63,637 nt of DNA from contig NIVC01004034.1 in the NCBI GenBank assembly GCA_002269645.1, forward strand, positions 1 through 63,637. The letters are read 5' to 3'. The translations under genes and the position numbers were made by a program. How positions within the stretch are numbered: the first letter of the stretch is position 1; every line of letters begins with the position of its first letter. This stretch comes from Macrostomum lignano. Lineage: Eukaryota. The notes beneath the pieces were generated by a model. The model saw only the letters and a list, made by a program, of their open reading frames with translations. It was not told the DNA's origin and did not search any database. This document shows, in pieces, positions 28,560 through 50,899 of the stretch.

Positions 28560-29330
28560 ATTCACTAGCTCAACCTTCACTAGGTCAACCTTCACTAGCT
28601 CAACCTTCACAAGCTCAACCTTCACAAGCTCAACCTTCACTAGCTCAACCTTCACTAGCTCAACCTTCACTAGCTCAACCTTCACTAGCTCAACCTTCAC
28701 TAGCTCAACCTTCACAAGCTCAACCTTCACAAGCTCAACCTTCACAAGCTCAACCTTCACTAGCTCAACCTTCACAAGCTGAACCTTCACAAGCTCAACC
28801 TTCACTAGCTCAACCTTCACAAGCTGAACCTTCACAAGCTCAACCTTCACTAGCTCAACCTTCACTAGCTCAACCTTCACTAGCTCAACCTTCACTAGCT
28901 CAACCTTCACTAGCTCAACCTTCACTAGCTCAACCTTCACTAGCTCAACCTTCACTAGCTCAACCTTCACTAGCTCAACCTTCACTAGCTCAACCTTCAC
29001 TAGCTCAACCTTCACTAGCTCAACCTTCACTAGCTCAACCTTCACTAGCTCAACCTTCACTAGCTCAACCTTCACTAGCTCAACCTTCACAAGCTCGAAC
29101 TTCACAAGCTCAAAATTCACAAGCTTGAGCTTCAAAAGATCACCCTTTACAAGCTCCACCTTTACAAGCTCAACCTTCACAAGCTCAACCTTCACTAGCT
29201 CAACCTCCACAAGCTCGAACTTCACAAGCTCAAAATTCACAAGCTTGAGCTTCAAAAGATCACCCTTTACAAGCTCCACCTTCACAAGCTCCACCTTTAC
29301 AAGCTCGAAATTCACAAGCTCAAACTGTGA
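28560..29330. repeat. 15-bp minisatellite (ttcactagctcaacc)
   Basis: 5-codon periodicity (AQPSL / VKVEL); the degenerate 3' end is duplicated as a higher-order block. Confidence 0.95.
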
Positions 29331-29914: not shown

Positions 29915-31345
29915 GGTATGGTGGAATTGTGCTTAGATTTGGTGGAATTGCGCTTACACTGGGTGGAATTGCGCTTACACTGGGTGGAATTGGGCTTAGA
30001 TTGGGTGGAATTGGGCTTACACTGGGTGGAATTGCGCTTACACTGGGTAGAATTGGGCTTACACTGGATGGAATTGCGCTTACACTGGGTGGAATTGCGC
30101 TTACACTGGGTTGAATTGCGCTTACTGGGTGGAATTGCGCTTACACTGGGTGGAATTGCGCTTACTGGGTGGAATTGCGCTTATACTAGGTGGAATTGCG
30201 CTTACACTGGGTGGAATTGGGCTTAGATTGGGTGGAATTGCGCTTAGATTTGGTGGAATTGCGCTTACACTGGGTGGAGTTGCGCTTAGATTTGGTGGAA
30301 TTGCGCTTACACTGGGTGGAATTGCGCTTACACTGGGTTGAATTGCGCTTACTGGGTGGAATTGCGCTTACACTGGGTGGAATTGCGCTTACTGGGTGGA
30401 ATTGCGCTTACACTGGGTGGAATTGCGCTTACTGGGTGGAATTGCGCTTATACTAGGTGGAATTGCGCTTACACTGGGTGGAATTGCGCTTACTGGGTGG
30501 AATTGCGCTTACTGGGTGGAATTGCGCTTAGAGTTGGTGGACTCGCGCTTAGATTTCGTTGACTTTTGCCTCGATTTGGTGGTATTGTGCTTAGATCTTG
30601 TGGACTTTTGCCTCGATTTGGTGGTATTGCGCTTAGATCTTGTGGACTTTTGCCTCGATTAGGTGGTATTGCGCTTAGATCTTGTGGACTTTTGCCTCGA
30701 TTTGGTGGTATTGCGCTTAGATCTTGTGGACTTTTGCCTCGATTTGGTGGTATTGTGCTTAGATTTGATGGACTTTTGCCTCGATTATTGCGCTTGGATT
30801 TGATGGACTTTTGCCTCGATTATTGCGCTTGGATTTGATGGACTTTTGCCTCGATTATTGCGCTTGGATTTGATGGACTTTTGCCTCGATTTGGTGGTAT
30901 TGTGCTTGGATTTTATGGACTTTTGCCACGATTTGGTGGTATTGTGCTTGGATTTGATGGACTTTTGCCTCGATTATTGCGCTTAGATTTGATGGACTTT
31001 TGCCTCGATTATTGCGCTTGGATTTGATGGACTTTTGCCTCGATTTGGTGGTATTGTGCTTGGATTTTATGGACTTTTGCCTCGATTGGGTGGTATTGTG
31101 CTTGGATTTGATGGACTTTTGCCTCGATTATTGCGCTTAGATTTGATGGACTTTTGCCTCGATTTGGTGGTATTGTGCTTGGATTTGATGGACTTTTGCC
31201 ACGATTTGGTGGTATTGTGCTTGGATTTTATGGACTTTTGCCACGATTTGGTGGTATTGCGCTTAGATTTGATGGACTTTTGCCTCGATTTGGTGGTATT
31301 GGGCTTGGATTCGGTGGAATTGCGCTTAGATTTGGTGGTATTGCG
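29915..31345. repeat. Compound minisatellite: 21-bp (gggtggaattgcgcttacact) grading into 42-bp and 35-bp derivatives
   Basis: Unit changes visible at ~30545 and ~30780. Confidence 0.9.
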
Positions 31346-32064
31346 CATACAGTATCGCTAAAACTAATGGCAGGGCAATAGAAATTAATGTTGTGTTTCA
31401 AGTTTACACAATATTACAAACGCAGATAACTTTAATGCATACAGTATACAACCGAAGCACAAAGACGCCGCGCCATACTCGCAGATCTTTCCAGTTGCAA
31501 AATGCAAAGGCGAGAAGCATGGCTTCTTTCAATTTTTTTAGATATGAAAATAGTCAAGTTTCTTTAACAAAGTAAAAGACCGCTACCTAAGCACAGTTAA
31601 ATTTCAACTATTCTTATCTGTTGCATTTTTCGCCATAACTCTGAGGGACACCCCTCGTAGAGAGCACATGTATAAATTATCTTTATTTGATCTGCAACTC
31701 GGCAGCTCAGGTGAAATTAGCAGCTTAGGCCTTGAGCTGAAATATGCCCATCTCACTAATACCTTTCTTACAGCAGAGTTATCAATCAGTGTAAGCTTAG
31801 CTGAAAGTGGACTCGAACCCTGGCCATACTTGCCAGTTTCTTTCCCCATCGATTTTCCTCAGCTGGCCTGGCCAAGGCTTCACCAATTAGCCAGGCTGAA
31901 CAAAACTACGAGTACATGCTTTATGCATTCGCGCCCTCTCGCATGAACTCCGCGCTGTCTGCTTATCAGCAGACGAACTCCGACAGTCAGTGCGGGAACA
32001 AATGCTGGAATCACCTGCAGTCCTGCACGAGCCGCATCTTCAAATAGCGGCACACCAGCGACCC

Positions 32065-32894: not shown

Positions 32895-34710
32895 GGAGGG
32901 ATTCAGACGGGGGGAGACTCAGACGGGAGGGGGGAGACTCAGACTGCAGGGGGGAGAGATTCTGACGGGAAGGGGAGACTCGGATAGGGGGAGACTCAGA
33001 TGGGAGGGGGAGATTCAGACGTAGGGGGATGAGACTCGGATGGGAGGGGGGAGACTCAGATGGGAGGGGGAGACTCAGACTGGAGGGGGGAGAGATTCAG
33101 ACGGGAAGGGGAGACTCAGATAGGGGGAGACTCAGACGGGAGGGGGAGACTCAGATGGGAGGCGGAGACTCAGACGGGAGGGGGGAGACTCAGATGGGAG
33201 GGGGGAGACTCAGATGGGAGGCGGAGACTCAGATGGGAGGGGGGAGACTCAGACTGGAGGGGGAGACTCAGATGGGAGGGGGAGACTCAGATGGGAGGGG
33301 GAGACTCAGACTGGAGGGGGGGGAGATTCAGACGTAGGGGGATGAGACTCGGATGGGAGGGGGGAGACTCAGATGGGAGGCGGAGACTCAGACGTAGGGG
33401 GATGAGACTCGGATGGGAGGGGGGAGACTCAGATGGGAGGGGGAGACTCAGATGGGAGGGGGAGACTCAGATGGGAGGGGGAGACTCAGACTGCAGGGGG
33501 GAGAGATTCAGACGGGAAGGGGAGACTCGGATAGGGGGAGACTCAGACTGGAGGGGGGGGGAGATTCAGACGGGAAGGGGAGACTCGGATAGGGGGAGAC
33601 TCAGACGGGAGGGGGAGACTCAGATGGGAGGGGGGAGACTCAGATGGGAGGCGGAGACTCACACGGGAGGGGGGAGACTCAGATGGGAGGGGGGAGACTC
33701 AGATGGGAGGCGGAGACTCAGATGGGAGGGGGAGACTCAGACTGGAGGGGGAGACTCAGATGGGAGGGGGAGACTCAGATGGGAGGGGGAGACTCAGACT
33801 GGAGGGGGGGGGAGATTCAGACGGGAAGGGGAGACTCGGATAGGGGGAGACTCAGACGGGAGGGGGAGACTCAGATGGGAGGGGGGAGACTCAGATGGGA
33901 GGCGGAGACTCAGATGGGAGGGGGGAGACTCAGACTGGAGGGGGAGACTCAGATGGGAGGGGGAGACTCAGATGGGAGGGGGAGACTCAGATGGGAGGGG
34001 GGAGACTCAGATGGGAGGCGGAGACTCAGATGGGAGGGGGGAGACTCAGATGGGAGGGGGAGACTCAGACTGGAGGGGGAAACTCAGACTGGAGGGGCAG
34101 ACTCAGATGGGAGGGGGGAGACTCAAACTGGAGGGGGAAACTCAGACTGGAGGGGGAGACTCAGACGGGAGGGGGAGACTCAGATGGGAGGCGGAGACTC
34201 AGATGGGAGGGGGGACACTCAGACTGGAGGGGGAGACTCAGATGGGAGGGGGAGACTCAGACTGGAGGGGGAGACTCAGACTGGAGGGGGAGACTCAGAC
34301 GGGAGGGGGAGACTCAGATGGGAGGGGGGAGACTCAGACTGGAGGGGGAGACTCAGATGGGAGGGGGGAGACTCAGACGGGAGGGGGAGACTCAGATGGG
34401 AGGGGGGAGACTCAGACGGGAGGGGGAGACTCAGATGAGGGGAGACTCAGATGGGAGGGGGAGACTCAGATGAGGGGAGACTCAGATGGGAGGGGGAGAC
34501 TCAGATGGGAGGGGGGAGACTCAGACTGGAGGGGGAGACTCAGATGGGAGGGGGGAGACTCAGACGGGAGGGGGAGACTCAGATGAGGGGAGACTCAGAT
34601 GGGAGGGGGAGACTCAGATGGGAGGGGGGAGACTCAGACTGGAGGGGGAGACTCAGATGGGAGGGAAGAGACTCAAATGAGGGGAGACTCAGATGGGAGG
34701 GGGAGACTCA
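32895..34710. repeat. G-rich ~19-21-bp minisatellite (ggggagactcagatgggagg), ~1.8 kb
   Basis: Tandem G-run units; source of spurious GGGDSD/RLRWEG ORFs. Confidence 0.95.
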
Positions 34711-36881
34711 AAACGCGGAGCTGGTGGGGTCGGAGCGGACGGCCCAGTCAGGAGCTCCCGGGGGCGGCCCCCGGTTGCTTTCAGCGCCGTCGAAACGCTG
34801 GCAGCGGGCGAGCTGGGCGCGCTGCTTGACGGTGGCGAAGCGGGCATAGAAGGTGTCATCCAGGCGGCGCTTGATGTCGGCGACGGCGGCGGATTCCCAC
34901 ACCAGGCTGCGCACCCGCAGATTCGCCTGCTCGTCCTCGGCCTCACCGCTGCCTGAGGCGGTCTCGTCTTCCTCGTCTGAGGAGGTGAAATCCCGGGACA
35001 GCACGGCGCGGAACTGGTTGAGCTCGTCTGGGGACAGGTGCGGCAGCAGAGACTCGAATGCCTTCTGGCGCCGGCCGAGCTTCTGCGATGCGATGGGGAT
35101 TGGCGATTCTCACTAGGTGTACGGGGCGATTCTCACTTGGTGTACGGGGCGATTCTCACTAGGTGTACGGGGCGATTCTCACTTGGTGTACGGGGCAATT
35201 CTCACTTGGTGTACGGGGCGATTCTCACTAGGTGTACGGGGCGATTCTCACTAGGTGTACGGGGCGATTCTCACTAGGTGTACGGGGCGATTCTCACTAG
35301 GTGTACGGGGCGATTCTCACTAGGTGTACGGGGCGATTCTCACTAGGTGTACGGGGCGATTCTTGCTAGGTGCACGGGCGATTCTCAATTGGTGTAGGGG
35401 GGGGGGGGCGATTTTTACTCAGTTAATGGGGGCTAATTCTGGCTAGCACCACGGTTACGGACACAAATGAGAATCTGTATTCCAAAAAGCCTCACCGCCT
35501 TCATCCGGTTGCAGCGGGCGGCAGTCCGCCTGTTGCACTGGACCCGCTTGCTCTCCCGCAGGTAGTACTGGTACAGCTCTGCGGGCGGCATTCCGGTTTG
35601 ACTATGACTGACTCGAGAGTCGCGCAAGCAATGCAGCAACAAAGACTGGCTAAAGACTCACTTTTCCAGGTGTCCTCGTCGGCCTCGATGCCAGATTCAT
35701 CCCTCACCAAGTCCAAGACGCTGCGAGCCGCGTCCTGATTGATCGAGTGCTCCCAGCTGAGGGCGGCAAGGGAAAGCGGCTTGCAGGGCTTGGGGAGGTG
35801 GCTGAGTGAGCACTGATTGAGTAGCCAACTAGGCGCGCACCCTACCTCTTGGAGAAGTCGAACAAGTGAGGACCGCTGCCTCGGAGCTTCTTGTAAGCAT
35901 CTTGCAGTATGTTCTGTGGGCAAATTTCTGCTTCTGCTTGATTTCATTCAACTGAAACTCTCAAACTAGAGTGCCCAGACACAGACTAGAGTGCTCAGAC
36001 ACTAATGAGTGCACAGACTAACGAGTGCCCAGACACAGACTACAGTGCTCAGACACTAACGAGTGCCCAGACAATGATTAGAGTGCTCAGACACTAACGA
36101 GTGCCCAGACAATGATTAGAGTGCTCAGACACTAACGAGTGCCCAGACAGACTACAGTGCTCAGACACTGAGTGCCCAGGCACAGACTAGAGTGCTCAGA
36201 CACTTAACGAGTGCCCAGGCACAGACTAGAGTGCTCAGACACTAACGAGTGCCCAGACACAGACTAGAGTGCTCAGACTAGCCAGGCCAGCAGGCTCACC
36301 CGAACGTTGCCGCTCCAGCAGTTGTTGGCAGAGCTGGAAAATTCTCCGCCGCTGCAGCTCAAGATTGATGGACAGCCGGCAGTTCGGTGCGCGGCAGACT
36401 CCGAATCGTCAACGAGCGCCGCTTCATCGTCAGCTGCCTCGTTGAAGTTGTCGGCGGAGTTGACTTGGTGGACGAGAATGCCGCAGCCGCCGCCGCCAGC
36501 CTCGCCGTTAGTGTCAGCCAAGCGAACCTTGGACTCGCGGAATTCTTCAGCAGAATGTTGCAGAGGCCGCTTCCGATCTGCTGGGATCTGCGGCTCAGAC
36601 TCCTGCGCAGACGGCTGCTGCACAGGCAGCGGCAGCGGCGCCGCCTCGGCCAGTCGGTGCTCGGCGCGGACGAGCCGGAGCTGCACATCGGCGGCCGAGG
36701 GCTGCATGATGTCCACCAGCTGCAGGTGCAGGTTGTTGATGAGGCGCAGCGCGGCGCACAGGTCGTCCAGAGTCATGCTGTCCAGCAGCATGCCCGCGTT
36801 CATCAGGGTGGACTCGAACAGGGTCAGCGTAGAGAAAGCCGGCTGCTGCTGCTGCTGGTGCTGAAGGACGGCGGCGGCCAT
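34708..36881 (-). CDS. C14orf93-like putative nuclear protein, gene B (single exon at the position of gene A's array)
   Basis: Phase-consistent exons 36881-36300 (ends phase 0), 35913-35846 (0 to 2), 35756-35662 (2 to 1), 35578-35496 (1 to 0) and 35082-34708. Reads ...DAYKKLRGSGPHLFDFSKSWEHSINQ...TWKKLYQYYLRESKR...KA|KLGRRQK...DFTSSDEE...VRSLVWES...IKRRLD...GPPPGAPDWA. Confidence 0.8.
35100..35395. repeat. 23-bp minisatellite (ggcgattctcactaggtgtacgg)
   Basis: Tandem periodicity in the last intron of gene B. Confidence 0.95.
35965..36280. repeat. ~38-bp dimeric minisatellite (actagagtgctcagacactaacgagtgcccagacacag)
   Basis: Alternating gagtgctcagac / gagtgcccagac half-units in intron 1 of gene B. 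Confidence 0.9.
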
Positions 36882-37389
36882 TGCTGGGCAAACTAGTCGG
36901 TCTGCTGCAAAAATGGTTTTCAACACAGCTGTGACTACAAATCCACACAATGCAAAAAATGCATCTAGTTCTACTGGCCTACTTTTACTCATGGGCATAT
37001 TGAGTGCGAATTACTGGCGGAATTTGCTAAGACGAGTCAGATTTGGTCATAGACAAAACCAACGAACCTCAGTGACTGAGCAGTTGGTCATAAAAACGAA
37101 CGAACCTCTGAGCAGTTTTGCATTGCTTAAACTGGCCATGAATCGGTTCTGGACTCTGACTGCTATCTAGGGATTAATAAGTAGTATTAAGCCTACTTAC
37201 TGCTGAGGAATTCAGCAACAAATTCATATTTTTGCTTTACTGTCAAGTCGGTGGTCACAGAGCAGAGCAGTGTGACCGGGTGAGTAAATACAGGTGCTAA
37301 GATGATAGACTGGCCGTATATTTGAGAACTGATTGAGAACACAACAGCACAGCATAGTCAATAGCAGAACAGTGACAGTAATGAAATAC

Positions 37390-38222: not shown

Positions 38223-41200
38223 TTATTGAGTGGCGCCGCCAGGCGGATGAGACGCCGTCCAGGCTGGGTCGCGCGCCCAGTCGAGCTGGTCGGCGGGAGG
38301 CGGGCGGCTGGACAGCACAGCTGGGTCCCGCTGCAGCCGCAAAACGTCCGCACGCTGCTTGTCGTCGGCGAGGCGTTCGAGGAAAACTTCGTCTAATCGA
38401 CGCTTCATCTCGCGCAGCTCGGCGCTCTCCCAAGGGAGGCTGCGCACCTTCATCTCAGAGTCCAAGTCGGCACCGCCTTCTTCATCCGAGCTGGTGTAGT
38501 CCCTGTTGAGCACGCTCTCGTATTTTGTCTGGGCGGTCTGGTCGAGGTTGGGCTTCAGGGCCTCGTAGCTCTTCTGGCGCCGGTTCAGCTTCTGCGGGGG
38601 GACCGGCGGGTCAGGATGGGATTCTCGGGCTGGACGAGATGGGATTCTGGGGCTGGATGAGATGGGATTCTCGGGCCGGATGAGATGGAATTCTGGGGCT
38701 GGATGAGATGGAATTCTCGGGCTGGACGAGATGGGATTCTCGGACTGGATGAGATGGGATTCTGGGGCTGATGGGATGGGGATTCTCAGGTAGGTGAGAT
38801 GGGATTCTCGGGGTGATGGGATGGAGTTTCTCAAATAGGTGAGATGGGATTCTCAGGGTGATGGGATGGGGATTCTCAGGTAGATGAGATGGGATGGGAT
38901 TCTCAGGTAGATGGGATGGGATTCTCGGGCTGGTGGGATGGGGATTTACTAAATTAGAAGCCAGTTACCAAGAGTTCTCGGCAGAACGCGGATAGAGCAG
39001 CCGGGAGAGTCGTACAATAGACTTACCCTCGGCAGTTCAAACAAGGAAAATAGCTTTAGCAGCAGACACAACTGAACCAGACAAATCAGGCTCTCACCCC
39101 TGCTCAGACAGTGCGAATGCTCACTGCTATTCATCACCACAACACAGCGCAAAGCCAAGTCCGCACTCACAGTTTGCACAAGAAAGATTGAGTTCAGCTT
39201 GCTCTGCTGCTGCTGCTGTTTAAAATCCCGCTTGAGATTCTTATTAAACCAGCTGCCAAGGTACTTGAATCCGGCCTCTATAAAGAATTGCTAACACAGA
39301 ATTAGCCTAGACAAGCGCAGTGAGAGCTGCCTTTCCGAGAGTTGCTGGGCCGATCAGCTCTAACAAACAAATCAGGAAACGCACTAACTGACCAGGCTAA
39401 TCCGAACAATGCTTCGAGTGTCCGACTGCCGCTTGTTGACCTTAAATGCGCACTGCAGATTCTTGCGATAATGCCCGCCAAAGTACTTTAGCGACTGGGC
39501 TGCAGGGGCGGGGAAGGAGTTTCTTAGCAGTGATTTTCTCAACCAAGTGCAAGGGGAAGCATTGCAGGCGCCCGAGCCCCAACTGGCAGGGGAGGCGCAA
39601 CTTACTATAAGACTGAGCACCGTGTGCCGACACTGCTGGCTGCGCTCTGAGCTGACATATTTAAACTTTAGGTACCTGCGATAGTAGGAGCTAAGGTAGG
39701 CGGAGCAGCCTCCTGCAACAACAGGCAGTTCAGGGTCAGTCAGCCCCCTAACAAACAATGGAGCAACAAAAATTGGCTGGGACGTTGCAGAGAGCCGGCG
39801 GCAGAATGGAGGGACACAGCCTGGTCTGCCAATGCCCGCTTCACTCAATATGCTATGCACATTGTTGATATCGATCGCCCCTCAAACCCTATCATTCCAG
39901 ACCCGTGCTGCTTACCCCACTCTCATCATCGCCTCCTATCCACAAAACCCGCCGAATTTTCCGAGCCCCTATTGCCCTGTCTAGAATCAAATGTACTATT
40001 ATCACACTCTGCCAGACACCAGCTGCTGAACTCTTCGCTTTACGAAGTGCCAGACATGCTCGATGGGGTTCGTGTCTGGAGACTTTGACGTTCCTGTCCC
40101 TGAAGCCGCACTTTGCGCAGCCTTCGCCCATTTCTCAATCACCGATGGAATGCAAAACTTTTGGCCCTTGTGGCAGCGTGAGTGGGGGGGGGGGTGGTTA
40201 GCTGTTGCTGAGTATGCATCTTGTGAGCCAGACACGGTAGGGTTTGGCTACACGGGGCGCAGACACGTACCCAGATTCGATGGAAGCTATTCTTTAGATA
40301 ATCCTGCCTATAATCGCGCCGCAATACGCAGCGGAAATAGCCCGAGTAGTAACTCAGCGCCCGCTCTGCAACAATACACATTATATGCATGGAATTGTGC
40401 ATCTTCAAAAACTCGCCAATCGGGCTAACGTAGCGGGCAGGTGCTGGGCGCTGATCAGCTGCGCACACCTACCAGGACGCGGTGGAACACTTTGTCGCAT
40501 ATGCGCTGCTGGTGCTGCACTTTATAATCTCGTTTGAGCACAGCGCTAAAGTACACTTTAAAGTATTTTTCGGCTACAACTGGAAGTGCAAAAACAATTG
40601 AATTGCGGAGCGGACACAGAAATTGCTGGGGATTCGCTGCGGGCATTCCAGGCCTGGGAGCAAGTGCTGGTCACCAAAAGCTAAGCCTTACTGAGCCCAG
40701 GTATTTGAAGCGATCCATCCGCTGCTGCAGCTGCGCCTGCTCAAGGAGCTTCTTGGCCGATGGCTTCAGCGTCCAAGAGAAATAGGTGCTCAGGTAGCTG
40801 TAGCAGAGCCCTGCAAAGCAGCCCGACCCCCCGAAGTGTTGCAGGGCTGCTACACAATTTCTACCCTAGACTGAGGTGCAAAGGGCGTTGCCAGGGGACA
40901 GGAGACGAGGTCGGCAGGCTGTAGGTCTTACCAAGCTGAAAAGGAATTGCCTCTTCCAGCGAGAGGCCATGTGCAGCTTCTTGACGCCGGGCTTCAGCGT
41001 GCAGCCGAAGTACACGGACATGTACCGGTTGCAGCCGCCTGAAACAGCGCCGGATGGCCAGCTGCGAGTCTCTGGTGATGAGTGCGAATTCCCCTGCCAG
41101 CTGAGCGAGAATTCCCCTGCCAGCTGAGCGAGAATTCCCCTGCCAGCAAAGCGAGAATTCCCCTGCCAGCTGAGCGAGAATTCCCCTGCCAGCAAAGCGA

Positions 41201-42973
41201 GAATTCCCCTGCCAGCTGAGCGAGAATCCCCCCGTTGCTTAGCGGAGGGTTTTTGGGAAGCGGCGACGCTGAATAGGCATTAATAAATTATGATAATTAG
41301 TTGATTAGGTTGTCATACAAGGAGAGCATTGGTGCAGCGGGGGCGGCCCCCGATACCCCCCGATTTGCAACGGGGCCGATTATTATTATTACTATAGTTA
41401 TATTTTAAAGCTCCACAGCGCGGCAGCTGCACGGCTCAGCCAATATCGCAGCATTTTTTTATTTCGGACCAATAACTTTAAATATTTGCACAACTCATCA
41501 GGCCCTGCAACGCCCTTTTTTGTAGTCTGTTTTATAGTGAAATTAAATTCGATAATGCACAGACAATCACATGCTAATATGCAATGAGACCGCTGGGGAG
41601 GCACACTTCAGGCCAATGTAGTGATCAATGGATCATTGGGCACAAGTGCAATAATAAAGGCATTTAATATTTGCAGTATGCATTATTCAAATAGTTTGAT
41701 TTTAATTCCAAATTTAGATAATCTCTTTATGGTGGCAATATACCGCCAACAGTGTGCCAACCCGCCGCTCCCAGATATAAGCGTACTACTAGCAGTAGCC
41801 TACACAGAATATGACAGGAAATGACTTGAAAGACCCACTTCTCCAGGCGGACAGGTTCGCGGGCTGGTATTGGCTGAGGCTGAGCGCTCGGTCGATCACG
41901 CGGTTGGCGGCCAGGACGTTGACGCGGGCGGAGTAGGGCAGGGAGAAGTCGAACACGTTGGTGCCAGTCTCGTCCTTCAGCACTCGGTAGGCCTTGCGCA
42001 GCGTGGCCTTCCAGTCGTTGGACAGCTCGCCGGAGTCGGACAGGTCGGAGCCGCCGCCGCCGCCGCCACCGCCGCCTGGGCCGAGACGGGGCAGCTTGGC
42101 GGGCGGGCTCTGGCCGAAGGCAGCGGCGCCAGCACCGGAGCCGTCGTACACCAGATCCGCCTCCATCAGGACGCAGTCGTCGTCGGAATCGGCGCCCGGC
42201 TCCGACTTGACACCGGAGAAGGACGGCTCCGGCTTGCCCAGCTTCGACGTGCCCGGAGCTCCGGCGGCAGCGGCAGCGGCAGCAGCGGCGGCCACACCGG
42301 CCAGGCCGCCAGAGCCGCTTGTTGATCGCGAGGCGGGCGGCGGGCACTGCGAGGGATGGCGAGGGAAGCCATGGGCTGGTTTCCTGCTGTTTGGGCCTGG
42401 GCGATTCCAAAGGGGTGGTGCAGGGGCAGAGGCGATTCCATAGGGGTGGTGCAGGGGCAGAGGCGATTCCAAAGGGGTGGTGCAGGGGCAGAGGCGATTC
42501 CAAAGGGGTGGTGCAGGGGCAGAGGCGATTCCATAGGGGTGGTGCAGGGGCAGAGGCGATTCCATAGGGGTGGTGCAGGGGCGATTCCATAGGGATAGTG
42601 CAGGGGCGATTCCATAAGGGTGGTGCAGGGGTGATTCCATAGGGGTGGATCACGGTCAGTATATCTTGGGCCAATCCCGAGGCGGTGGTCAAGGCGCAGT
42701 TTACAGGTGATCTATACTGCACTGGATTGAGCTTACCTGGCTGTGCTCATCAGCCACAGTAGCCAGCCGCTGCACAGTGGGGTCCAGCACCTCCAGCAGG
42801 TGGCCGTGCAGCTGGGCCACAATCTTGAACGCCATGAGCAGGTCTCGCACTGCCATGCTGTCAATGAGCATGGTGGCGCTGCTGATGGTGCACTCAAACA
42901 TGGTCAGCGGAGAGAAGCTGCCGCCGCCCTGGCCGCCGGCCGGGGTAGGCGGAAATCCCATAGCGATTGACAT
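38223..42973 (-). CDS. C14orf93-like putative nuclear protein, gene A, with a seven-exon mutually exclusive cassette array
   Basis: Constant exons 42973-42737 (ends phase 0), 42346-41839 (0 to 1; ends AWR a|gtgggt) and 38591-38223 (cgcag|KLNRRQK...DYTSSDEE...VRSLPWES...MKRRLD...SSRPPP...WA*). Only a phase 1-to-0 exon joins them in frame, and seven are present. Confidence 0.85.
38610..38945. repeat. ~23-bp minisatellite (gggctggatgagatgggattctc)
   Basis: Tandem units just upstream (- strand) of the terminal exon acceptor. Confidence 0.9.
39171..39277 (-). CDS. Gene A cassette exon V7 (107 nt)
   Basis: ctttatag|ag...act|gtgagt; (K)AGFKYLGSWFNKNLKRDFKQQQQQSKLNSIFLVQT. Confidence 0.8.
39393..39499 (-). 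CDS. Gene A cassette exon V6 (107 nt)
   Basis: cccctgcag|cc...ctg|gtcagt; (T)QSLKYFGGHYRKNLQCAFKVNKRQSDTRSIVRISL. Confidence 0.75.
39606..39712 (-). CDS. Gene A cassette exon V5 (107 nt)
   Basis: tgttgcag|ga...ata|gtaagt; (R)GCSAYLSSYYRRYLKFKYVSSERSQQCRHTVLSLI. Confidence 0.8.
40000..40150 (-). mobile_element. Tc1 transposase fragment inside the exon array
   Basis: SPDTNPIEHVWHFVKRRV matches the Tc1 SPDLNPIExxW motif. Confidence 0.7.
40271..40365 (-). CDS. Gene A cassette exon V4 (95 nt)
   Basis: tgttgcag|ag...tgg|gtacgt; (K)RALSYYSGYFRCVLRRDYRQDYLKNSFHRIW. Confidence 0.8.
40473..40579 (-). CDS. Gene A cassette exon V3 (107 nt)
   Basis: cacttccag|tt...ctg|gtaggt; (I)VAEKYFKVYFSAVLKRDYKVQHQQRICDKVFHRVL. 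Confidence 0.8.
40692..40810 (-). CDS. Gene A cassette exon V2 (119 nt)
   Basis: ctttgcag|gg...tca|gtaagg; (R)LCYSYLSTYFSWTLKPSAKKLLEQAQLQQRMDRFKYLGS. Confidence 0.8.
40932..41038 (-). CDS. Gene A cassette exon V1 (107 nt)
   Basis: tgtttcag|gc...ttg|gtaaga; (S)GCNRYMSVYFGCTLKPGVKKLHMASRWKRQFLFSL; very high GC3. Confidence 0.8.
41083..41232. repeat. 23-bp minisatellite (ctgagcgagaattcccctgccag)
   Basis: About 6 units in the intron preceding V1. Confidence 0.95.
42400..42650. repeat. 31-bp minisatellite (gattccataggggtggtgcaggggcagaggc)
   Basis: Tandem units in intron 1 of gene A. Confidence 0.95.
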
Positions 42974-43484
42974 GACGGAGATTTAGGCTGGTTGGATGGC
43001 GGAGGCCGCGAGGCTGCACTGCAAACGTGGCGGTGGGTTTGGAAGGGGCTGCCTTGGTGACTGAACTCTGTGCATGCTCAAGCCTTCACTAGATGGCTAG
43101 TCTCTAAACACAAGGTGCTGAATACTAGCTAAGCATGAGACAACTTTAGCTATTTATATAGTAGTCTAACCAACAGCATAGAATTGGGTAGTGGTACTGA
43201 GATATCCAGATATGAAACTATTTGATACTTGGCCGCATTGTGCATTTAACCCTAAGCAGGGGAGGGAAGCGCCCTTCTCGATTCCGCTTTATAAGTGCCA
43301 ATGTAATTTGGGAGTCGATCCAAAGCTTAAACACAATGGATTATATAAGATGGCCATCATGCTAGCAGTTCTTCATGCTAGCGTTACTTCCGTGAGTGAC
43401 GGATGGCAGAAAGGCAACCTACTTAAGAAGCAGATTGCGGAGTGACAGCTTTCATACTAGTAGCTGACAACTTCCTTGCTGGGT

Positions 43485-44155
43485 GACAACTTTAGGGACT
43501 GATTAGAGTGACAGCTTTCCTAAGTGACGGATTGCCGAGTGACAACTTTAGGGACTGATTAGAGTGACAGCTTTCCTAAATGACGGACTGCCGAGTGACA
43601 ACTTTAGGGGCTGATTAGAGTGACACCTTTCCTAAATGACGGATTGCCGAGTGACAACTTTAGGGGCTGATTAGAGTGACAGCTTTCCCAAGTAACGTAT
43701 TGCCGAGTGAAAACTTTAGGGGTTGATTAGAGTGACAGCTTTCCTAAATGACGGATTGCCGATTGACAACTTTAGGGGCTGATTAGAGTGACAGCTTTCC
43801 CAAGTGACGTATTGCCGAGTGAAAACTTTAGGGACTGATTAGAGTGACAGCTTTCCTAAATGACGGATTGCCGAGTGACAACTTTAGGGGTTGATTAGAG
43901 TGACAGCTTTCCTAAATGACGGATTGCCGAGTGACAACTTTAGGGGCTGATTAGAGTGACAGCTTTCCCAAGTGACGTATTGCCGAGTGAAAACTTTAGG
44001 GACTGATTAGAGTGACAGCTTTCCTAAATGACGGATTGCCGAGTGACAACTTTAGGGGTTGATTAGAGTGACAGCTTTCCTAAATGACGGATTGCCGAGT
44101 GACAACTTTAGGGGCTGATTAGAGTGACAGCTTTCCTAAATGACGGACTGCCGAG
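43485..44155. repeat. 56-bp minisatellite (gacaactttaggggctgattagagtgacagctttcctaaatgacggattgccgagt)
   Basis: Unit starts at 43485 and 43541; about 12 copies. Confidence 0.95.
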
Positions 44156-46285: not shown

Positions 46286-48103
46286 TTAAAACCGAAAAGG
46301 ACGAGGTGGAGGTGCCGACTGTCCAAATCTGGAATTCGCCGGAGGCTGCAGCAGGCCCTGGTTGCTTACAGGCCTAGGAGTTCCAAAGGGTCTGATGCCT
46401 GGGCCGGCTGGCGCTGGATTGGCGTAGGGCTGGCCAAATTGCGGCCCGGGAGCAGAGCGGCCAGTCTGCTGTGAGTACTCCGGACCTCTGCTCATGTCGG
46501 ACCTATCAGCGCTGCCGGATTCAAACGAAGCATTGCGCCCGGGAACGTAGCCGCGGCCCACAGGTTGCATGGGTTCATCCATGCGCGGTCGTTTTATTTC
46601 GCCACCATGGGCGCTGTTCGAATCTAAGGAATTCCTTTTCCCAAAAGCAGCGTTCTGCTGTTGCTGCTGCTGTAGTTGAACGTCAGGTACGTTTCGTGAC
46701 TGACGCGGAAAAGTTGAATGCTGCTGGCCAATATTTGAAAAACCTGGAGCAGGCGCTCTTGAGGCTGGTGACGCAAAAGGGTTGCTTAGCTGCTGAGCAG
46801 ATCCAGCAATACCAATGGATGGCGTCGAACCGTATGGACGAACCTGCTTTTGCTGCTGGCCAGCTTGAGGCATGGACTGCTGCGGAGGATTGCTGGGAGT
46901 TGCAAAGCGAGGACCAGCTGACTGAGCAGGCGTGCTTGACTGAGGCTGAGTCGGTTTAGTGAAGTCGCTAGCAAACAAGCTCGGAATGTCTCCTTGCGAC
47001 CGATTTCCATGCCTAGCAGAGCCTCTTGCTGACGGACCAACTGATTTCTGATTCGATCCCGATCCAAAAGATGAGCTAGTGCTCTGTTTGGAATTTTGCA
47101 CATTGCCAGAAGCCTTGTTACCGGAGAAACTACCGGCTGGACTACCAGCAACATTCCTTTGCGTAGGAGTGGTTGAAGCACTCTTAGAGACAGGGGCATT
47201 CTTGTTTGCTGGACTAGCTTTGCTAGCCGAGCTGGGTGCGGCTGCAGAGCCAGACTGGGCCGCTTTGCTGCCAGCCGTTGCTGAGCTAGATGCGTCAGCA
47301 TTAGCTGCGTTGCTAGCTGCAGGTTGCTGCCCTTTGCCTAATAGCAGCGCCCCGCCAAGCAGCAAGTCCTTCTGCTTCATCCAGGGGAACATGCTGATAG
47401 GAATGAAAGTGGCGCCATCGTTCGCATCCCAGTACTTTTTGAAGTAAGAGTTGGCAATGCCAGAATTCAGTTCCCAAGAAACTGACAATGGTCGAGTTTT
47501 TGGAACGCCAGAAATAGCCTTGAATGCTTCAGATCGGCTCTTAAATGTTACTGCTGCTGTGTTTAAGAACGCCTTATAGTCGATGCGGGTCACTGTGCCA
47601 AATTCTTCTGCTCTCTCCTTCACCTTCTTTTCGCTCCAAAACTTTGGTATCTGCTTTATCATGATGGAGGTACTGCAAACAGCCACGTGACCATCTCTGG
47701 GCTTCGGGAGACCAAGCTCTTCAACGCTAGAGTCCCCAGACTTGCTTACGCCATTAGCTGCGTCTTTCGAAGCTGGGGTCCCCTGGGCGGTGGATGAACT
47801 TTGCTCGGCCTGCTTTGCTACTGGCTGCTTAGAGGACGAATCACTAGATGACTGTTGCTGTGATTGACTCTTAGCGTCAGGGGCGGTGGTTTCAGGCTTC
47901 TCAGCAGCTGTCGCTGAGGTGTCTTCACTACTAGCTTGGGCCATTTGAGCCCCCATCTGTCTAAAGGCATACTCATTCACGGTGCTAAAAAACTGATTAA
48001 CTTCTTTTAAGCCTGTAACTAAGGCATCGCCCTTAGATGACTTAATGCACTCAAGAACCTGGCTCAGAAGAGTTGGGATTTTTGTCGAATTGTCCGCTGC
48101 CAT
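46286..48103 (-). CDS. Intronless SCAF4/SCAF8-type RRM protein lacking a recognisable CID domain
   Basis: 605-aa ORF. STSIMIKQI...EEFGTV...AAVTF...EAFKAI...SVSWELNSGI...KKYWDANDGATFIP matches the SCAF4/8 RRM and its WD..G.T.IP extension; low-complexity S/Q/P tail; tttcag acceptor 4 nt before the ATG. Confidence 0.8.
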   Translation of the reverse strand: MAADNSTKIPTLLSQVLECIKSSKGDALVTGLKEVNQFFSTVNEYAFRQMGAQMAQASSEDTSATAAEKPETTAPDAKSQSQQQSSSDSSSKQPVAKQAEQSSSTAQGTPASKDAANGVSKSGDSSVEELGLPKPRDGHVAVCSTSIMIKQIPKFWSEKKVKERAEEFGTVTRIDYKAFLNTAAVTFKSRSEAFKAISGVPKTRPLSVSWELNSGIANSYFKKYWDANDGATFIPISMFPWMKQKDLLLGGALLLGKGQQPAASNAANADASSSATAGSKAAQSGSAAAPSSASKASPANKNAPVSKSASTTPTQRNVAGSPAGSFSGNKASGNVQNSKQSTSSSFGSGSNQKSVGPSARGSARHGNRSQGDIPSLFASDFTKPTQPQSSTPAQSAGPRFATPSNPPQQSMPQAGQQQKQVRPYGSTPSIGIAGSAQQLSNPFASPASRAPAPGFSNIGQQHSTFPRQSRNVPDVQLQQQQQQNAAFGKRNSLDSNSAHGGEIKRPRMDEPMQPVGRGYVPGRNASFESGSADRSDMSRGPEYSQQTGRSAPGPQFGQPYANPAPAGPGIRPFGTPRPVSNQGLLQPPANSRFGQSAPPPRPFRF

Positions 48104-49199
48104 GGGCTGAAATAAAGCAAGAAGGAAAAACTACTTTACTAAACTACTAACACATTATTTTAAACCCACTCCAGACCTAATGGATTACAATGATGCTTGC
48201 AATAGAATACAAATAAATTTCATAGACTAACTTCCTGGCCAATGAAAACAAAAGAAAATTAACTATAAAATTACACCCTTTCTTTCCAAATTTATTGCTG
48301 CATCTCAAGTTGAAGGCTTCAGTTTTTTGTAGGAAGGCAATCTAAATTTGAAAGAAAAAACTATATGCTTAATCATCTATTCGGGTCTCTTACAATCTTA
48401 GCCTCTCAAAGTAAGAAATTTCATCACCAATGATTACACTTTTAACAAGAGATTGGGGAATTAATGCAAGTTATTTCAACCCTATGTACTTTATAAAGCA
48501 ATCATACACTTTTGTAACTTAAAGTATATTTTTTCAAGATTCATTAATTTTTAGAAGATAGATTTTTAGTATATAGAGGTACATTTTACTTTTTGCTTTT
48601 GCTTTATAACCCTTAGATTGTGCATATTTGGGCATATTATAAAGGCTTGTCAATTTTTGCATGTAAAACAGACATAACCAAATGATGTCTCATTTAGAAG
48701 AGCATATCTCTCCAAACAAAACTATTTTTAAGTCTAATAAATGCTTCCAATCACTGCAATGCTGCTGAAATGAGTTCCACTAGCTGTGACAATCTGAAAC
48801 ACTATTAGAAGCTTGGCTTTATAGAATTTATGTAGCTTATGTAGTTTAGACCTTGGCTGCAATAGTGCTCTACAAGACAATACAATTGACTATTAATTTA
48901 TTGTCACTTTTCAAACTTTAATTTATAAATAAATAAGCTGTAAGACATACAGATTTTGAACTTGTGGAATTCCAATCCCTGGAAGTATTTTAGCATACAT
49001 TCTTAAATTTGAAGTCTTACTCAAACAAAAACTTATTAATAAAGTTAGGATAAGGTTTGAAAAAATAATGAATTTGTGCTAAAATAAAAATTTTAGGCAA
49101 GCATTGATCTTATCAGCTGGGATACCACATAGAATGAGTCTCTAAATGTGTCTATCTAAAGCAAATGTTGGCAAACTCTGGCTTTTGACTCTTTCTGTC

Positions 49200-49650
49200 T
49201 ATCTAGTTCTTTGAAACTTCTCTTCTCTCTCCTTTGTTTTCTTATCTCATCTATCATGTTGCCTTTTTTCTCTTCTTTCTTCTTTTCTCTCTTATCCTTC
49301 CTTTTTTATCTCATCTCAGAAGAGGTCATCTTTGCCTTTTCCTATCTACTCATTTTTCCCTCTCCTTTCTTCTCTCTTTTTCTTCTTTCTTTTCTTCCCT
49401 CTTCTTATATATATATATATTCCTTTATCTCCCTTCACTTTTATCTCTATTCTCATTTTTTTCTCTTTTCTCCTCTCTTCCCTCTCGTATCTTACCTTAT
49501 CTCTTCTCTTATCTCATCTCTCTCATCTTGCTTCTCCTCTCCCCTTCTTCTCCCTCCCTTTCTCTCATTGTCCTCACCCCCTTATTTCTCTTATCTTCTC
49601 TCTCTCTTTGAATCATCTATTCTTTTTTCTTTCTGTTCATCTATTTTTTA
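49200..49650. repeat. CT-rich low-complexity tract
   Basis: Polypyrimidine run; source of spurious F/S/L ORFs. Confidence 0.9.
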
Positions 49651-50899
49651 GCCATGAGCTAGATTCTTTAACTGGCCTTTGAGGTAAAAGTCTGCCTATC
49701 TCTGGTTGGAAAGCCAGTTTGTAGGACCTAGTACTCTCATGGTTGTTTTCATACTTTGATTATGTCATCTTTCTTGCCAATTTTTCTTGCCTTGAAAGGA
49801 ATTTGTGTATTTTCAGCTCCACTGCAGTCTGCATCAGTCTAACAAACAAGGAAATGCACATTTCTTAAGAGGCCATTCAAGTTTTTAAGTACCTTTAAGA
49901 GAAACTTAAAATTTCCATGGTATGACTAATTTAATAGGGTGGTATTGCATTGCATTGCCTTTTTATAAATATTTTGCTTTTACAAACCATGCTAAATTTC
50001 CTTGATTTGCAAAGTTTAATTGCTGCGGAGTTTACCTATAGAAGGCAATGGTTAGATTTTTCTCACTAAATAATTATGGCTCAATAGCCTCTCCATGAGG
50101 TGCATAGGCTATAAATAAAGTTATTCTAGAACATTCTACATTTGATATATATATTCAGCACTATGGCCTAACCCTTGGTCTGGCTTTAGGGGAATAAGTG
50201 GATGGCACAAACAACAGAAAAAGCAGACTAACTTAAAATGCTTATAGTTTCTATTCTGATTGAGTTACAAAGTTGAAACTTTACATTTAGACAAAGAATG
50301 TCAATGAAAAATTGTGAAGTTTGAAGTCTATTCTTTTATATGGAGCAAACTTGTAGCAGCCAAAAGTTAGCCAATTTTACAACCTTTTTTATACACCTAG
50401 GCCTAGATTGGAAAAGAGGCAAGTGGGCAAAGGTTGGGATGGTAGCTTTGCTAACAAAAAACAGCTAAGTTTTTGCACTACTAGGTAGGAAGACTTAATT
50501 TAGGAAATTTTACTAGCTATTTAGCCCCTTTCTAGGTGGCTTTTTAGCATTTAAGCATTGGTCTATAAGCAGTTTTATATAGTTGCTAAACAAATGACAC
50601 TAATCTCCAAGCAGTTCTGCAATAGCAAATCTTTAAGCAATTTATACTGAGACTAAAAAAATCTTAGAGGTATATTTTCAATGTTTATAACTTTGAAATG
50701 TAAATTAATTTATAGTTGTCTTATTGTTATTGATATTCTTTGTATAAGTTAGTCTAATTATGTATTATTATTAGTATTAAATTATTAGTTTTATGTATTA
50801 TATTACATTTTGCAATAATTGACAATAAACCTAGCACAAGGATTACTATTAGAGTTGCTTTACTCTCCCCAGTTTAGTACCACTGCTATCCTGATTAGT

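What the first reader, a model, noticed from the sequence alone, without database searches (positions are those of the whole stretch)
39171..41038. Array of seven mutually exclusive cassette exons (Dscam/lola-like) in gene A
Seen: constant exon 2 ends in phase 1 (41839) and the terminal exon starts in phase 0 (38591). Between them lie seven AG...GT-bounded segments of 107, 119, 107, 95, 107, 107 and 107 nt. All are open, all have length 2 mod 3, and all share a pattern of about x3-Y-[LFM]-x2-[YWH]-[FY]-x3-L-[KRQ] followed by a basic/Gln helix, while differing strongly in sequence. Including none or two shifts the frame, so a productive mRNA carries exactly one (four or seven would also restore frame but are unlikely). 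Inference: exon duplication produces seven isoforms of one protein. I know of no such array in this family.
Basis: partly seen in the sequence, partly recalled or inferred. Interest (0 to 1): 0.96.

Follow-up and report, generated by a model that had tools for sequence, protein, structure and literature searches.

The report
Seven-exon mutually exclusive array, flatworm gene
A gene of the flatworm Macrostomum lignano carries seven alternative copies of one small exon, of which a working mRNA can hold only one, plus an intron element that looks like the RNA "docking site / selector" switch so far known mainly from the insect Dscam gene.

Summary
Seven AG...GT-bounded segments (107, 119, 107, 95, 107, 107, 107 nt) lie between a phase-1 donor (41839) and a phase-0 acceptor (38591) on the minus strand. 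Each is open only in the required frame and all share a K-Y-[LF]-x2-[WY]-[FY]-x3-L-K motif.

The organism is Macrostomum lignano. The RNA-seq-derived GenBank model BOX15_Mlig034464g3 equals exon 1 + exon 2 + cassette 7 + terminal exon exactly.

Any two cassettes together give a stop codon inside the second one, so only single inclusion is productive.

Four paralogous loci carry colinear arrays of 3-8 cassettes, so the array is older than the gene duplications and the cassettes are under selection.

New here: a 15-nt element, GGGCGTTGCAGGGCC (41515-41501), in the intron after exon 2. It is the only conserved island in that intron across the paralogs. It is complementary to a sequence ending 50-70 nt upstream of cassettes 2-7, and it shows locus-specific compensatory changes. 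This is the Dscam exon 6 type docking-site/selector layout.

Use of cassettes 1-6 at this locus and the role of the pairing still need RNA data. The protein family is found widely in animals, is uncharacterised and matches no Pfam family. Verdict: a real new member of a known kind.

The parts
42737..42973 (-). Constant exon 1 (ATG at 42973; 79 codons; ends in phase 0; donor CAG|GTAAGC)
   Evidence: The spliced product equals P0001.
41839..42346 (-). Constant exon 2 (508 nt, ends in phase 1, donor GAA|GTGGGT)
41494..41518 (-). Candidate docking site AAAGGGCGTTGCAGGGCCTGATGAG. Its core, GGGCGTTGCAGGGCC, is at 41515-41501. It lies in the 800-nt intron between exon 2 and cassette 1.
   Evidence: It gives the best score of 1612 candidate 23-mers for pairing with the regions upstream of the cassettes. 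The core is exact in L003 and L005 and nearly so in L001 and L002, inside introns that otherwise cannot be aligned. There is no Rfam match.
40932..41038 (-). Cassette 1 (107 nt): SGCNRYMSVYFGCTLKPGVKKLHMASRWKRQFLFSL. No convincing selector upstream.
40880..40896 (-). Selector for cassette 2: CCCTGGCAACGCCCTTT
   Evidence: Duplex with the dock -29.0 kcal/mol, p=0.02 against shuffles; alignment
40692..40810 (-). Cassette 2 (119 nt): RLCYSYLSTYFSWTLKPSAKKLLEQAQLQQRMDRFKYLGS
   Evidence: Reciprocal best match to L002 cassette 2, also 119 nt.
40641..40660 (-). Selector for cassette 3: CTCCCAGGCCTGGAATGCCC
   Evidence: -28.5 kcal/mol, p=0.01
40473..40579 (-). Cassette 3 (107 nt): IVAEKYFKVYFSAVLKRDYKVQHQQRICDKVFHRVL
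   Evidence: Reciprocal best match to L005 cassette 2.
40435..40458 (-). Selector for cassette 4: CTGATCAGCGCCCAGCACCTGCCC
   Evidence: -27.5 kcal/mol, p=0.02. It matches the window-specific dock flank CTGATG.
40271..40365 (-). Cassette 4 (95 nt): KRALSYYSGYFRCVLRRDYRQDYLKNSFHRIW
39779..39798 (-). Selector for cassette 5: CCGGCTCTCTGCAACGTCCC
   Evidence: -27.4 kcal/mol, p=0.03
39606..39712 (-). Cassette 5 (107 nt): RGCSAYLSSYYRRYLKFKYVSSERSQQCRHTVLSLI
39551..39575 (-). Selector for cassette 6: TCGGGCGCCTGCAATGCTTCCCCTT
   Evidence: -31.7 kcal/mol, p=0.02
39393..39499 (-). Cassette 6 (107 nt): TQSLKYFGGHYRKNLQCAFKVNKRQSDTRSIVRISL
   Evidence: Reciprocal best match to L003 cassette 2 (57% amino-acid identity).
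39337..39357 (-). Selector for cassette 7: CTGATCGGCCCAGCAACTCTC
   Evidence: -24.7 kcal/mol, p=0.05
39171..39277 (-). Cassette 7 (107 nt): KAGFKYLGSWFNKNLKRDFKQQQQQSKLNSIFLVQT. This is the cassette present in the transcript-derived GenBank model.
   Evidence: Orthologous type in L005 (cassettes 5 and 6) and L002 (cassette 3).
38223..38591 (-). Constant terminal coding exon. It starts in phase 0 (KLNRRQKSYEAL...), and its stop codon ends at 38223.

Best explanation
Gene A (GenBank BOX15_Mlig034464, Macrostomum lignano) contains a tandem-duplicated cluster of seven mutually exclusive exons. Each exon encodes an alternative version of the first two thirds of a long alpha-helix (residues about 248-284 of 406) in an uncharacterised protein family found widely in animals.

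A productive mRNA carries exactly one cassette. This follows directly from the sequence:
- With no cassette, the frame shifts in the terminal exon.
- With any two cassettes, a stop codon falls inside the second cassette, upstream of the last exon junction. Such an mRNA would be a likely target of nonsense-mediated decay (inferred).

The choice among cassettes 2-7 is most likely made by competing RNA base-pairing (inferred from complementarity, conservation and covariation). One docking site lies in the intron after constant exon 2 (41518-41494). It can pair with only one of the selector sequences, each of which ends 50-70 nt upstream of a cassette acceptor. As in the Dscam1 exon 6 model, the paired selector would bring its cassette next to exon 2 and activate it, while the other cassettes stay silent or are looped out.

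Cassette 1 has no selector. It may be a default choice, or it may be controlled some other way.

My estimates: the one-of-seven MXE array about 0.85; the docking/selector pairing as its control about 0.6-0.65.
For: Architecture: coordinates, phases, splice sites and frame-specific openness are all as reported. All 21 cassette pairs and the seven-cassette chain stop inside the second cassette.

Homology beyond chance: a profile built only from paralogue cassettes picks the seven window cassettes as the top seven of 1830 ORF pieces. There are no further copies anywhere in the window.

Transcripts: P0001 is identical to the cassette-7 isoform, and the GenBank models are built from RNA-seq with StringTie, TACO and TransDecoder (PMC5730564). 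In the paralogues, models with single cassettes use different positions: L001 cassette 5 (P0003) and cassette 7 (P0010), and L002 cassette 1 (P0004) and cassette 3 (P0008).

Selection:
- Arrays of 8, 3, 3 and 6 cassettes sit in L001, L002, L003 and L005.
- Cassette types are colinear and are reciprocal best matches across loci.
- dN is 0.37-0.57 with dS saturated. For L005 cassette 5 versus cassette 6, dN is 0.26 and dS is 3.0.
- The only two cassette differences between the window and L006 are synonymous.

Docking and selectors:
- The dock gives the best score of 1612 23-mers: mean of the best six duplexes -29.4, against a distribution of -15.8 +/- 4.1.
- The core is conserved as an island in the paralogues.
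- 16 of 27 cassettes across the five loci have an upstream site that pairs with their own dock at p<=0.05 against dinucleotide shuffles. This includes cassettes 2-7 of the window. In the window these sites end 51-69 nt from the acceptor; across all five loci the significant ones end 50-98 nt away.
- The own-locus dock is the unique best match for 12 of 21 selectors, where 4.2 are expected (p=2e-4).
- In register, 73.6% of cells pair, against 35-53% when slid. There are compensatory changes: the L001 dock G->A is matched by U in five of its selectors, and the L002 dock G->A is matched by a U.

Protein: in the AlphaFold2 model, residues 181-320 have pLDDT of about 90 and the cassette lies in helix 244-299.
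Against: - I found no RNA-level evidence for use of cassettes 1-6 at this locus. A search with all cassettes chained found only P0001 and the badly chained prediction P0002.
- Cassette 1, and the first cassette of three of the four paralogue arrays, lack a significant selector.
- Selectors were located by similarity to the dock, so the pair counts lean towards the structure.
- The dock core contains TTGCAG|G, which looks like a 3' splice site, so the motif could have another meaning.
- Selectors within a locus share ancestry, so the tests do not count independent events.
- Local folds upstream of the cassettes are not unusually stable.
- One paralogue model (P0006) skips all cassettes, so skipping may occur.
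Confidence: 0.75

Rival explanations
1. The array is a real MXE cluster, but exclusivity is enforced only by the reading-frame rule (with decay of mRNAs carrying two or more cassettes) together with ordinary splice-site competition or protein regulators. Under this reading the conserved GGGCGTTGCAGGGCC element and the CTGCAAC-type motifs are protein-binding intronic elements, decoy 3' splice sites, or relics of an inverted duplication. They would not be a functional RNA duplex.
For: The frame rule alone makes multi-cassette mRNAs unproductive. The dock core resembles an acceptor, TTGCAG|G. Cassette 1 has no selector. Only 16 of 27 cassettes reach p<=0.05.
Against: The dock scores best of 1612 sites for complementarity to the upstream regions, and it is also the one island conserved among the paralogues. 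Selectors follow the locus-specific flanks of the dock and its point changes. A protein-binding motif would be expected in the same orientation at every site, not as a reverse complement at one site.
Confidence: 0.17
2. Only cassette 7, or a small subset, is ever spliced in. The other cassettes are decaying duplicated pseudo-exons that happen still to be open.
For: Only the cassette-7 isoform of this locus is found in the protein collections. The transcriptome pipeline kept dominant isoforms only (TACO isoform-frac 0.75), so nothing is known about minor isoforms either way.
Against: All seven keep both splice sites and are open only in the required frame. Cassette types 2, 3 and 6 have reciprocal-best orthologues at colinear positions in paralogous loci, and cassette 1 also has related types there, although synonymous sites are saturated. 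They have therefore been kept by selection since before the gene duplications. Paralogue transcript models use first or internal cassettes.
Confidence: 0.07
3. The seven segments are constitutive exons that are spliced in series, or the array is an assembly or annotation artefact.
For: The WormBase-derived model P0002 strings together cassette 1, part of cassette 2 and cassette 3.
Against: P0002 keeps its frame only by using an internal acceptor and by reading through intron sequence. True serial splicing stops in cassette 2. The same array is present in an independent copy or assembly of the locus (L006) and in four paralogues.
Confidence: 0.01

Closest known systems
Drosophila/arthropod Dscam1 exon 6 cluster (docking site - selector sequences; Graveley model)
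   Same: - A tandem array of homologous cassette exons between two constant exons.
- A single conserved docking site in the intron just downstream of the upstream constant exon.
- A selector upstream of each variable exon, complementary to overlapping nucleotides of the dock, so only one can pair at a time.
- The dock is the most conserved intronic element.

According to PMC6071210, the upstream-dock layout is otherwise described only for this cluster.
   Different: - 7 cassettes rather than 48.
- The cassettes encode part of a helix in an uncharacterised protein that is not an Ig protein.
- The host is a flatworm (Platyhelminthes), not an arthropod.
- The first cassette has no selector.
- Cassette length is 2 mod 3, so the frame adds a second safeguard, whereas Dscam exon 6 variants keep the frame.
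- The same dock is shared by at least five paralogous genes.
- There is no experimental proof here.
Insect 14-3-3zeta, Mhc and MRP1 MXE clusters (competing RNA pairings with a downstream docking site)
   Same: Small clusters of 3-8 exons made by tandem exon duplication, with competing intronic pairings proposed to enforce the choice of one exon (PMC6071210).
   Different: In those genes the dock lies downstream of the cluster and the selectors lie downstream of each exon. Here the dock is upstream. I found no comparable site in the last intron.
Frame-incompatible MXE pairs policed by nonsense-mediated decay (for example FGFR2 IIIb/IIIc; from my own knowledge)
   Same: Exon lengths are not multiples of three, so double inclusion or double skipping shifts the frame and gives premature stops.
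   Different: Those are two-exon systems chosen by tissue-specific protein regulators. Here there are seven exons and a candidate RNA switch. Decay of the multi-cassette mRNAs was not tested.
Drosophila lola / mod(mdg4)
   Same: Many isoforms share a constant N-terminal part.
   Different: lola and mod(mdg4) use alternative 3' terminal exons, some joined by trans-splicing. Here the cassettes are internal, have both splice sites, and are followed by a common terminal exon. The comparison does not fit.

Membership tests
Tandem-duplicated mutually exclusive exon (MXE) cluster | Adjacent candidate exons of similar length, in the same splice phase, with intact splice sites | tested here: met
   Lengths are 95-119 nt, all 2 mod 3. 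All enter in phase 1 and leave in phase 0. All have AG/GT.
Tandem-duplicated mutually exclusive exon (MXE) cluster | The candidate exons are homologous to one another | tested here: met
   They share a motif. An independent profile built from paralogue cassettes ranks them as the top seven of 1830 ORF pieces.
Tandem-duplicated mutually exclusive exon (MXE) cluster | Mature mRNAs contain exactly one exon of the cluster, and several of the exons are used | tested here: inconclusive
   The cassette-7-only model equals the RNA-seq-derived P0001. Paralogue models use different single cassettes. No transcripts for cassettes 1-6 of this locus were found, and no read data were available.
Tandem-duplicated mutually exclusive exon (MXE) cluster | Inclusion of none or of several exons is unproductive, or is prevented | tested here: met
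   Skipping all cassettes shifts the frame. All 21 pairs give a stop inside the second cassette. Decay of these mRNAs was not tested.
Docking-site / selector-sequence control (Dscam exon 6 type) | One docking site in the intron next to the constant exon, conserved in related genes | tested here: met
   GGGCGTTGCAGGGCC lies at 41515-41501. It is exact in L003 and L005 and near-exact in L001 and L002, inside introns that cannot be aligned. Conservation was tested among paralogues, not among species.
Docking-site / selector-sequence control (Dscam exon 6 type) | A selector next to every variable exon, complementary to the dock and overlapping the same dock nucleotides | tested here: inconclusive
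   Met for cassettes 2-7 (p 0.01-0.05; all share the CTGCAAC-type core). Not met for cassette 1. Across the five loci, 16 of 27 cassettes are significant.
Docking-site / selector-sequence control (Dscam exon 6 type) | Compensatory evolution of dock and selectors | tested here: met
   The own-locus dock is the best match for 12 of 21 selectors (p=2e-4). Pair col7-54 is GC in 6 rows and AU in 5; pair col9-52 has one AU. The alignment was fitted to the pairing, so this evidence is supportive and not decisive.
Docking-site / selector-sequence control (Dscam exon 6 type) | Disrupting the pairing changes exon choice, and compensatory mutations restore it | not testable with these tools
   This needs minigenes or transgenic worms.
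Dscam / Ig-superfamily receptor | Ig and FN3 domains and a transmembrane receptor architecture | tested here: not met
   No Pfam domain was found. The predicted structure is all-helical. The relatives are uncharacterised proteins of cnidarians, echinoderms, a hemichordate, amphioxus and a bivalve.
lola-type alternative 3' exon array | The variable units are alternative terminal exons, each with its own stop codon and poly(A) site | tested here: not met
   Every cassette has a GT donor and no in-frame stop, and is followed by a shared terminal exon.

The most novel reading that the evidence does not exclude
A Dscam-exon-6-type RNA switch, with one upstream docking site competing for several selectors, arose independently in flatworms. 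It has been kept through repeated gene duplication. A whole subfamily of at least five Macrostomum genes would then each pick one of 3-8 versions of the same helix, giving a combinatorial set of variants of an uncharacterised protein family found widely in animals. This would be the first large upstream-dock MXE system outside arthropod Dscam. It would also sit in an organism where transgenesis can test it.
Probability: 0.5. Interest if true: 0.82.

Novelty: new member of a known kind. Interest (0 to 1): 0.72.

Why it matters
Large mutually exclusive exon clusters governed by competing RNA pairings are textbook cases, but they are known almost only from insects and other arthropods. The upstream-dock layout is tied to Dscam exon 6 (PMC6071210).

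A compact seven-exon cluster of about 2.7 kb, with a 15-nt dock and short introns, would be a small and tractable second system for three reasons:
- M. lignano can be made transgenic (PMC5730564).
- Four paralogous arrays act as natural replicates.
- The result would bear on whether tandem exon duplication readily produces dock/selector control by itself, as Ivanov and Pervouchine proposed (PMC6071210).

The finding also marks out a functional hot spot, a variable helix next to a basic KLxRRQK stretch, in a protein family found widely in animals that has no known function. Finally, it shows that current M. lignano annotations give only one isoform of these genes, or mis-chain the cassettes.

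Tried and rejected
1. Exact k-mer reverse-complement matches shared by at least three introns: none at k=7-10. An ungapped pattern search with 3 mismatches found only one selector. The pairings contain bulges, so RNAduplex and gapped alignment were needed.
2. The first RNAduplex scan timed out.
3. MAFFT alignment of the upstream introns was uninformative.
4. A docking site in the last intron (the downstream type seen in 14-3-3zeta): no window there beat the shuffles.
5. Protein function:
   - Pfam gave no hit for the window protein or for 10 relatives.
   - A PDB sequence-profile search gave nothing significant.
   - Foldseek of the AlphaFold2 model against the PDB gave no hit with E<=0.001.
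6. Rfam across the gene: only one sub-threshold snoRNA-like hit, inside a tandem repeat.
7. More isoforms in the protein collections: none.
8. Literature on flatworm MXEs or on these gene IDs: none found.
9. The idea that selectors mask their own acceptors in local hairpins: cassette 2 shows such a hairpin, but the local folds are not more stable than shuffles, with z from -1.25 to +0.9. I make no claim here.
10. An array in the distant paralogue L004: it has only one cassette-equivalent exon.
11. dN/dS could not be quantified for most orthologous cassette pairs, because dS is saturated.
Full report
**1. What is in the sequence.** The gene runs on the minus strand.

- Exon 1 (42973..42737) starts with ATG and ends in phase 0 at CAG|GTAAGC.
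- Exon 2 (42346..41839, 508 nt) ends in phase 1 at GAA|GTGGGT.
- The terminal coding exon starts at 38591 in phase 0, and its stop codon ends at 38223.
- Between exon 2 and the terminal exon lie seven segments starting at 41038, 40810, 40579, 40365, 39712, 39499 and 39277. Their lengths are 107, 119, 107, 95, 107, 107 and 107 nt.
- Each segment is preceded by a pyrimidine-rich tract plus AG and followed by GT(A/G/C)(A/C/G)G.
- Each is open only in the frame handed over by exon 2. Every cassette has a stop in frame 0, and five of seven have one in the third frame.
- All encode x3-(K/R/S/A)-Y-(L/F/M/Y)-x2-(Y/W/H)-(F/Y)-x3-L-(K/R/Q), followed by a basic or Gln-rich stretch.

**2. Chance.** I built a profile HMM only from 20 cassettes found in paralogous loci, with none from the window. 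I searched all 1830 stop-to-stop pieces of at least 20 aa in the six frames of the window. The seven cassettes are the top seven hits, with independent E-values from 6e-13 to 0.085. The eighth hit is at 3.4. A profile that includes the window cassettes finds exactly seven copies in the window, all in the array.

**3. Frame logic.**

- Each single-cassette mRNA gives an uninterrupted protein of 402-410 aa.
- Skipping all cassettes shifts the frame and ends the protein after 36 wrong residues in the terminal exon.
- All 21 ordered pairs of cassettes, and the chain of all seven, meet a stop codon inside the second cassette.

Only single inclusion is productive. That the multi-cassette mRNAs are degraded by nonsense-mediated decay is inferred, not shown.

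**4. Organism and transcripts.**

- The protein's close hits come only from Macrostomum lignano.
- The cassette-7 isoform is identical over all 406 residues to GenBank BOX15_Mlig034464g3 (P0001).
- GenBank models of that assembly come from RNA-seq (StringTie + TACO + a de novo transcriptome, with ORFs called by TransDecoder). An isoform-fraction filter of 0.75 removes minor isoforms (PMC5730564).
- The junctions exon 2->cassette 7->terminal exon are therefore transcript-supported. The lack of other isoforms in that annotation says little.
- A WormBase-derived model (P0002) strings together cassette 1, part of cassette 2 and cassette 3. It does so only by using an internal acceptor and reading through intron sequence, so I treat it as a prediction artefact.
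- A last search with all cassettes chained found no further isoforms of this locus.
- L006, the GenBank copy of this locus, differs from the window by 22 substitutions. Only two are in cassettes, and both are synonymous. It also differs in minisatellite copy number.

**5. The array is old and under selection.** I fetched the loci of the paralogues.

- L001 has about 8 cassettes, L002 has 3, L003 has 3 (plus one weak candidate) and L005 has 6. All have the same phase and motif.
- Independent annotations of the same paralogue use different single cassettes. For L001, P0003 uses cassette 5 and P0010 uses cassette 7. For L002, P0004 uses cassette 1 and P0008 uses cassette 3.
- One model, P0006 at L005, skips the array.
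- For window cassettes 2, 3, 6 and 7, the closest relative is a cassette at the colinear position of another locus, not a neighbour in the same array. The pairs are cassette 2 with L002 cassette 2, cassette 3 with L005 cassette 2, cassette 6 with L003 cassette 2, and cassette 7 with L005 cassette 5 and L002 cassette 3. The first three of these are reciprocal best matches.
- For these pairs dN is 0.37-0.57, while synonymous sites are saturated. The young pair L005 cassette 5 / cassette 6 has dN 0.26 and dS 3.0.

The array therefore predates the gene duplications, and individual cassette types have been kept by purifying selection. This argues against relic pseudo-exons. A more distant family member (L004) has one cassette-equivalent exon and no array.

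**6. A docking-site / selector layout (not in the original finding).**

*The dock.* In the 800-nt intron after exon 2 lies AAAGGGCGTTGCAGGGCCTGATGAG (41518-41494).

- I scanned all 1612 23-mers of the variable region for duplex formation with the sequences upstream of the seven cassettes. This site is the global best: the mean of its best six duplexes is -29.4 kcal/mol, against a distribution of -15.8 +/- 4.1. The next independent site is at -26.4 (earlier scan).
- Independently, the 15-nt core GGGCGTTGCAGGGCC is the only alignable island in the corresponding intron of the paralogues. It is exact in L003 and L005, reads AGGACGTTGCAGGGCT in L001 and reads GCGCATTGCAAGGCC in L002. In every case it sits a few hundred nt upstream of the first cassette, in AT-rich sequence that cannot be aligned.

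*The selectors.* Upstream of window cassettes 2-7, ending 51-69 nt before each acceptor, are sequences related to the reverse complement of the dock. Examples are CCCTGGCAACGCCCTTT, CTGATCAGCGCCCAGCACCTGCCC and CTGATCGGCCCAGCAACTCTC.

- Each pairs with the dock better than dinucleotide shuffles of its region do (p 0.01-0.05).
- Across the five loci, 16 of 27 cassettes reach p<=0.05, where 1.4 would be expected. The mean z is -2.1.
- The first cassette usually lacks such a site.

*Covariation.* The dock flanks differ between loci: CTGATG, TCTCT, GTTTA, GTTAG and ATCGC.

- Selectors follow their own dock. The own-locus dock is the unique best match for 12 of 21 selectors, where 4.2 are expected (binomial p 2e-4).
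- In the energy matrix, the own dock is best for four of five loci.
- On an alignment of dock-plus-selector chimeras, 73.6% of cells pair in register, against 35-53% when the partner is slid.
- The G->A change in the L001 dock is matched by U in five L001 selectors. The G->A change in the L002 dock is matched by a U.
- That alignment was fitted to the pairing, so I weight it less.

No Rfam family covers the element.

*Comparison with the literature.* The layout has one dock just after the upstream constant exon and selectors upstream of each variable exon, all overlapping the same dock nucleotides. This is the arrangement described for Dscam1 exon 6. The other insect clusters (14-3-3zeta, Mhc, MRP1) have downstream docks (PMC6071210). 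I found no paper on such a system in flatworms.

**7. The protein.**

- It matches no Pfam family.
- A profile search of 1.84 billion representatives found 359 relatives. Those I looked up are uncharacterised proteins of a hemichordate, echinoderms, a bivalve and amphioxus. Cnidarians are also represented.
- These relatives share several blocks: C..R..Y..L, F.F, N..V, a single (K/R)(R/T)YF.S.(K/R)D stretch at the cassette position, KL.RRQK, (Y/F)(M/T)SSEE, L.WES..L...K..LD, and S.RP.P..P.WA.
- None of 10 relatives has a meaningful Pfam hit.
- AlphaFold2 with a shallow alignment gives a confident helical domain (residues 181-320, pLDDT about 90). The cassette forms the first two thirds of helix 244-299, which continues into the basic KLNRRQK stretch.
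- There is no structural or sequence match in the PDB.

What the variable helix does is unknown. An exchangeable interaction surface next to a basic segment is my guess only.

**8. Verdict.** It is a seven-member MXE cluster made by tandem exon duplication.

- It is not lola-like, and the protein is unrelated to Dscam.
- In mechanism it is closest to Dscam exon 6.
- It is a new member of a known kind, in a new phylum and a new gene family, repeated across at least five paralogues.
- Still unproven: use of cassettes 1-6 at this locus, decay of multi-cassette mRNAs, and the causal role of the dock/selector pairing.
- My estimates: MXE array about 0.85; pairing-based control about 0.6-0.65.

Noticed in passing
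window 35501-36998 (-), continuing downstream to about 32000: The next gene downstream on the same strand is a divergent member of the same family. It has the N-terminal FSTLTLFESTLMNAGMLLDSM helix, and it is fused with the end of gene A in the database models P0011 and P0049. It has no cassette array. In every paralogous locus the array gene is likewise followed by another gene of 400-560 aa, which looks like a conserved tandem pair.
   Followed up: partly
window 42400-42648, 41079-41232, 38615-38942; also 28561-29323, 29919-31346, 32910-34710, 35102-35401, 43476-44000: The introns of gene A and the surrounding sequence are full of minisatellites with periods of 15-56 nt. The array at 38615-38942 in the last intron differs from GenBank copy L006 by indels of 234 and 396 nt. 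The 23-nt repeat at 41079-41232 lies directly upstream of cassette 1, the one cassette without a selector.
   Followed up: partly
window 40002-40235 (-): The one long inter-cassette intron (558 nt, between cassettes 4 and 5) holds a fragment resembling the C-terminus of a Tc1/mariner-type DDE transposase (...NPIEHVWHFVKRRV...; Pfam DDE_3, E=5.8e-4, below the curated cut-off). It is probably an old insertion that stretched this intron.
   Followed up: partly
window 41027-41043 (-) and 40800-40850 (-): The dock can also pair with the acceptor and first bases of cassette 1 (cag|GCGGCTGCAACCGG; -25 kcal/mol). Cassette 2 has a second selector-like copy, GCAGCCCTGCAAC, about 25-40 nt upstream of its acceptor, which folds into a hairpin with the cassette's own acceptor, TTTGCAG|GGCTCTGC. 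The dock core itself looks like a 3' splice site (TTGCAG|G). Masking of acceptors by selectors is therefore possible. However, local folds are not more stable than shuffles.
   Followed up: partly
L003 7438-7547 and L005 5820-5914 (+): The genes upstream of the array genes in two paralogous loci each contain a single cassette-like exon (for example MRYWFKDILRRNYRRQHQ and TRYLEQWYRKTLKPTH). They are therefore further family members without arrays.
   Followed up: no
L001 14180-25857: The paralogue L001 gene spans 16 kb, because about 11 kb separate its last cassette from the terminal exon. I did not examine what fills this intron.
   Followed up: no
window 48000-56000: A block of much lower G+C (29-34%, against 45-60% elsewhere in the window). 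I did not examine it.
   Followed up: no
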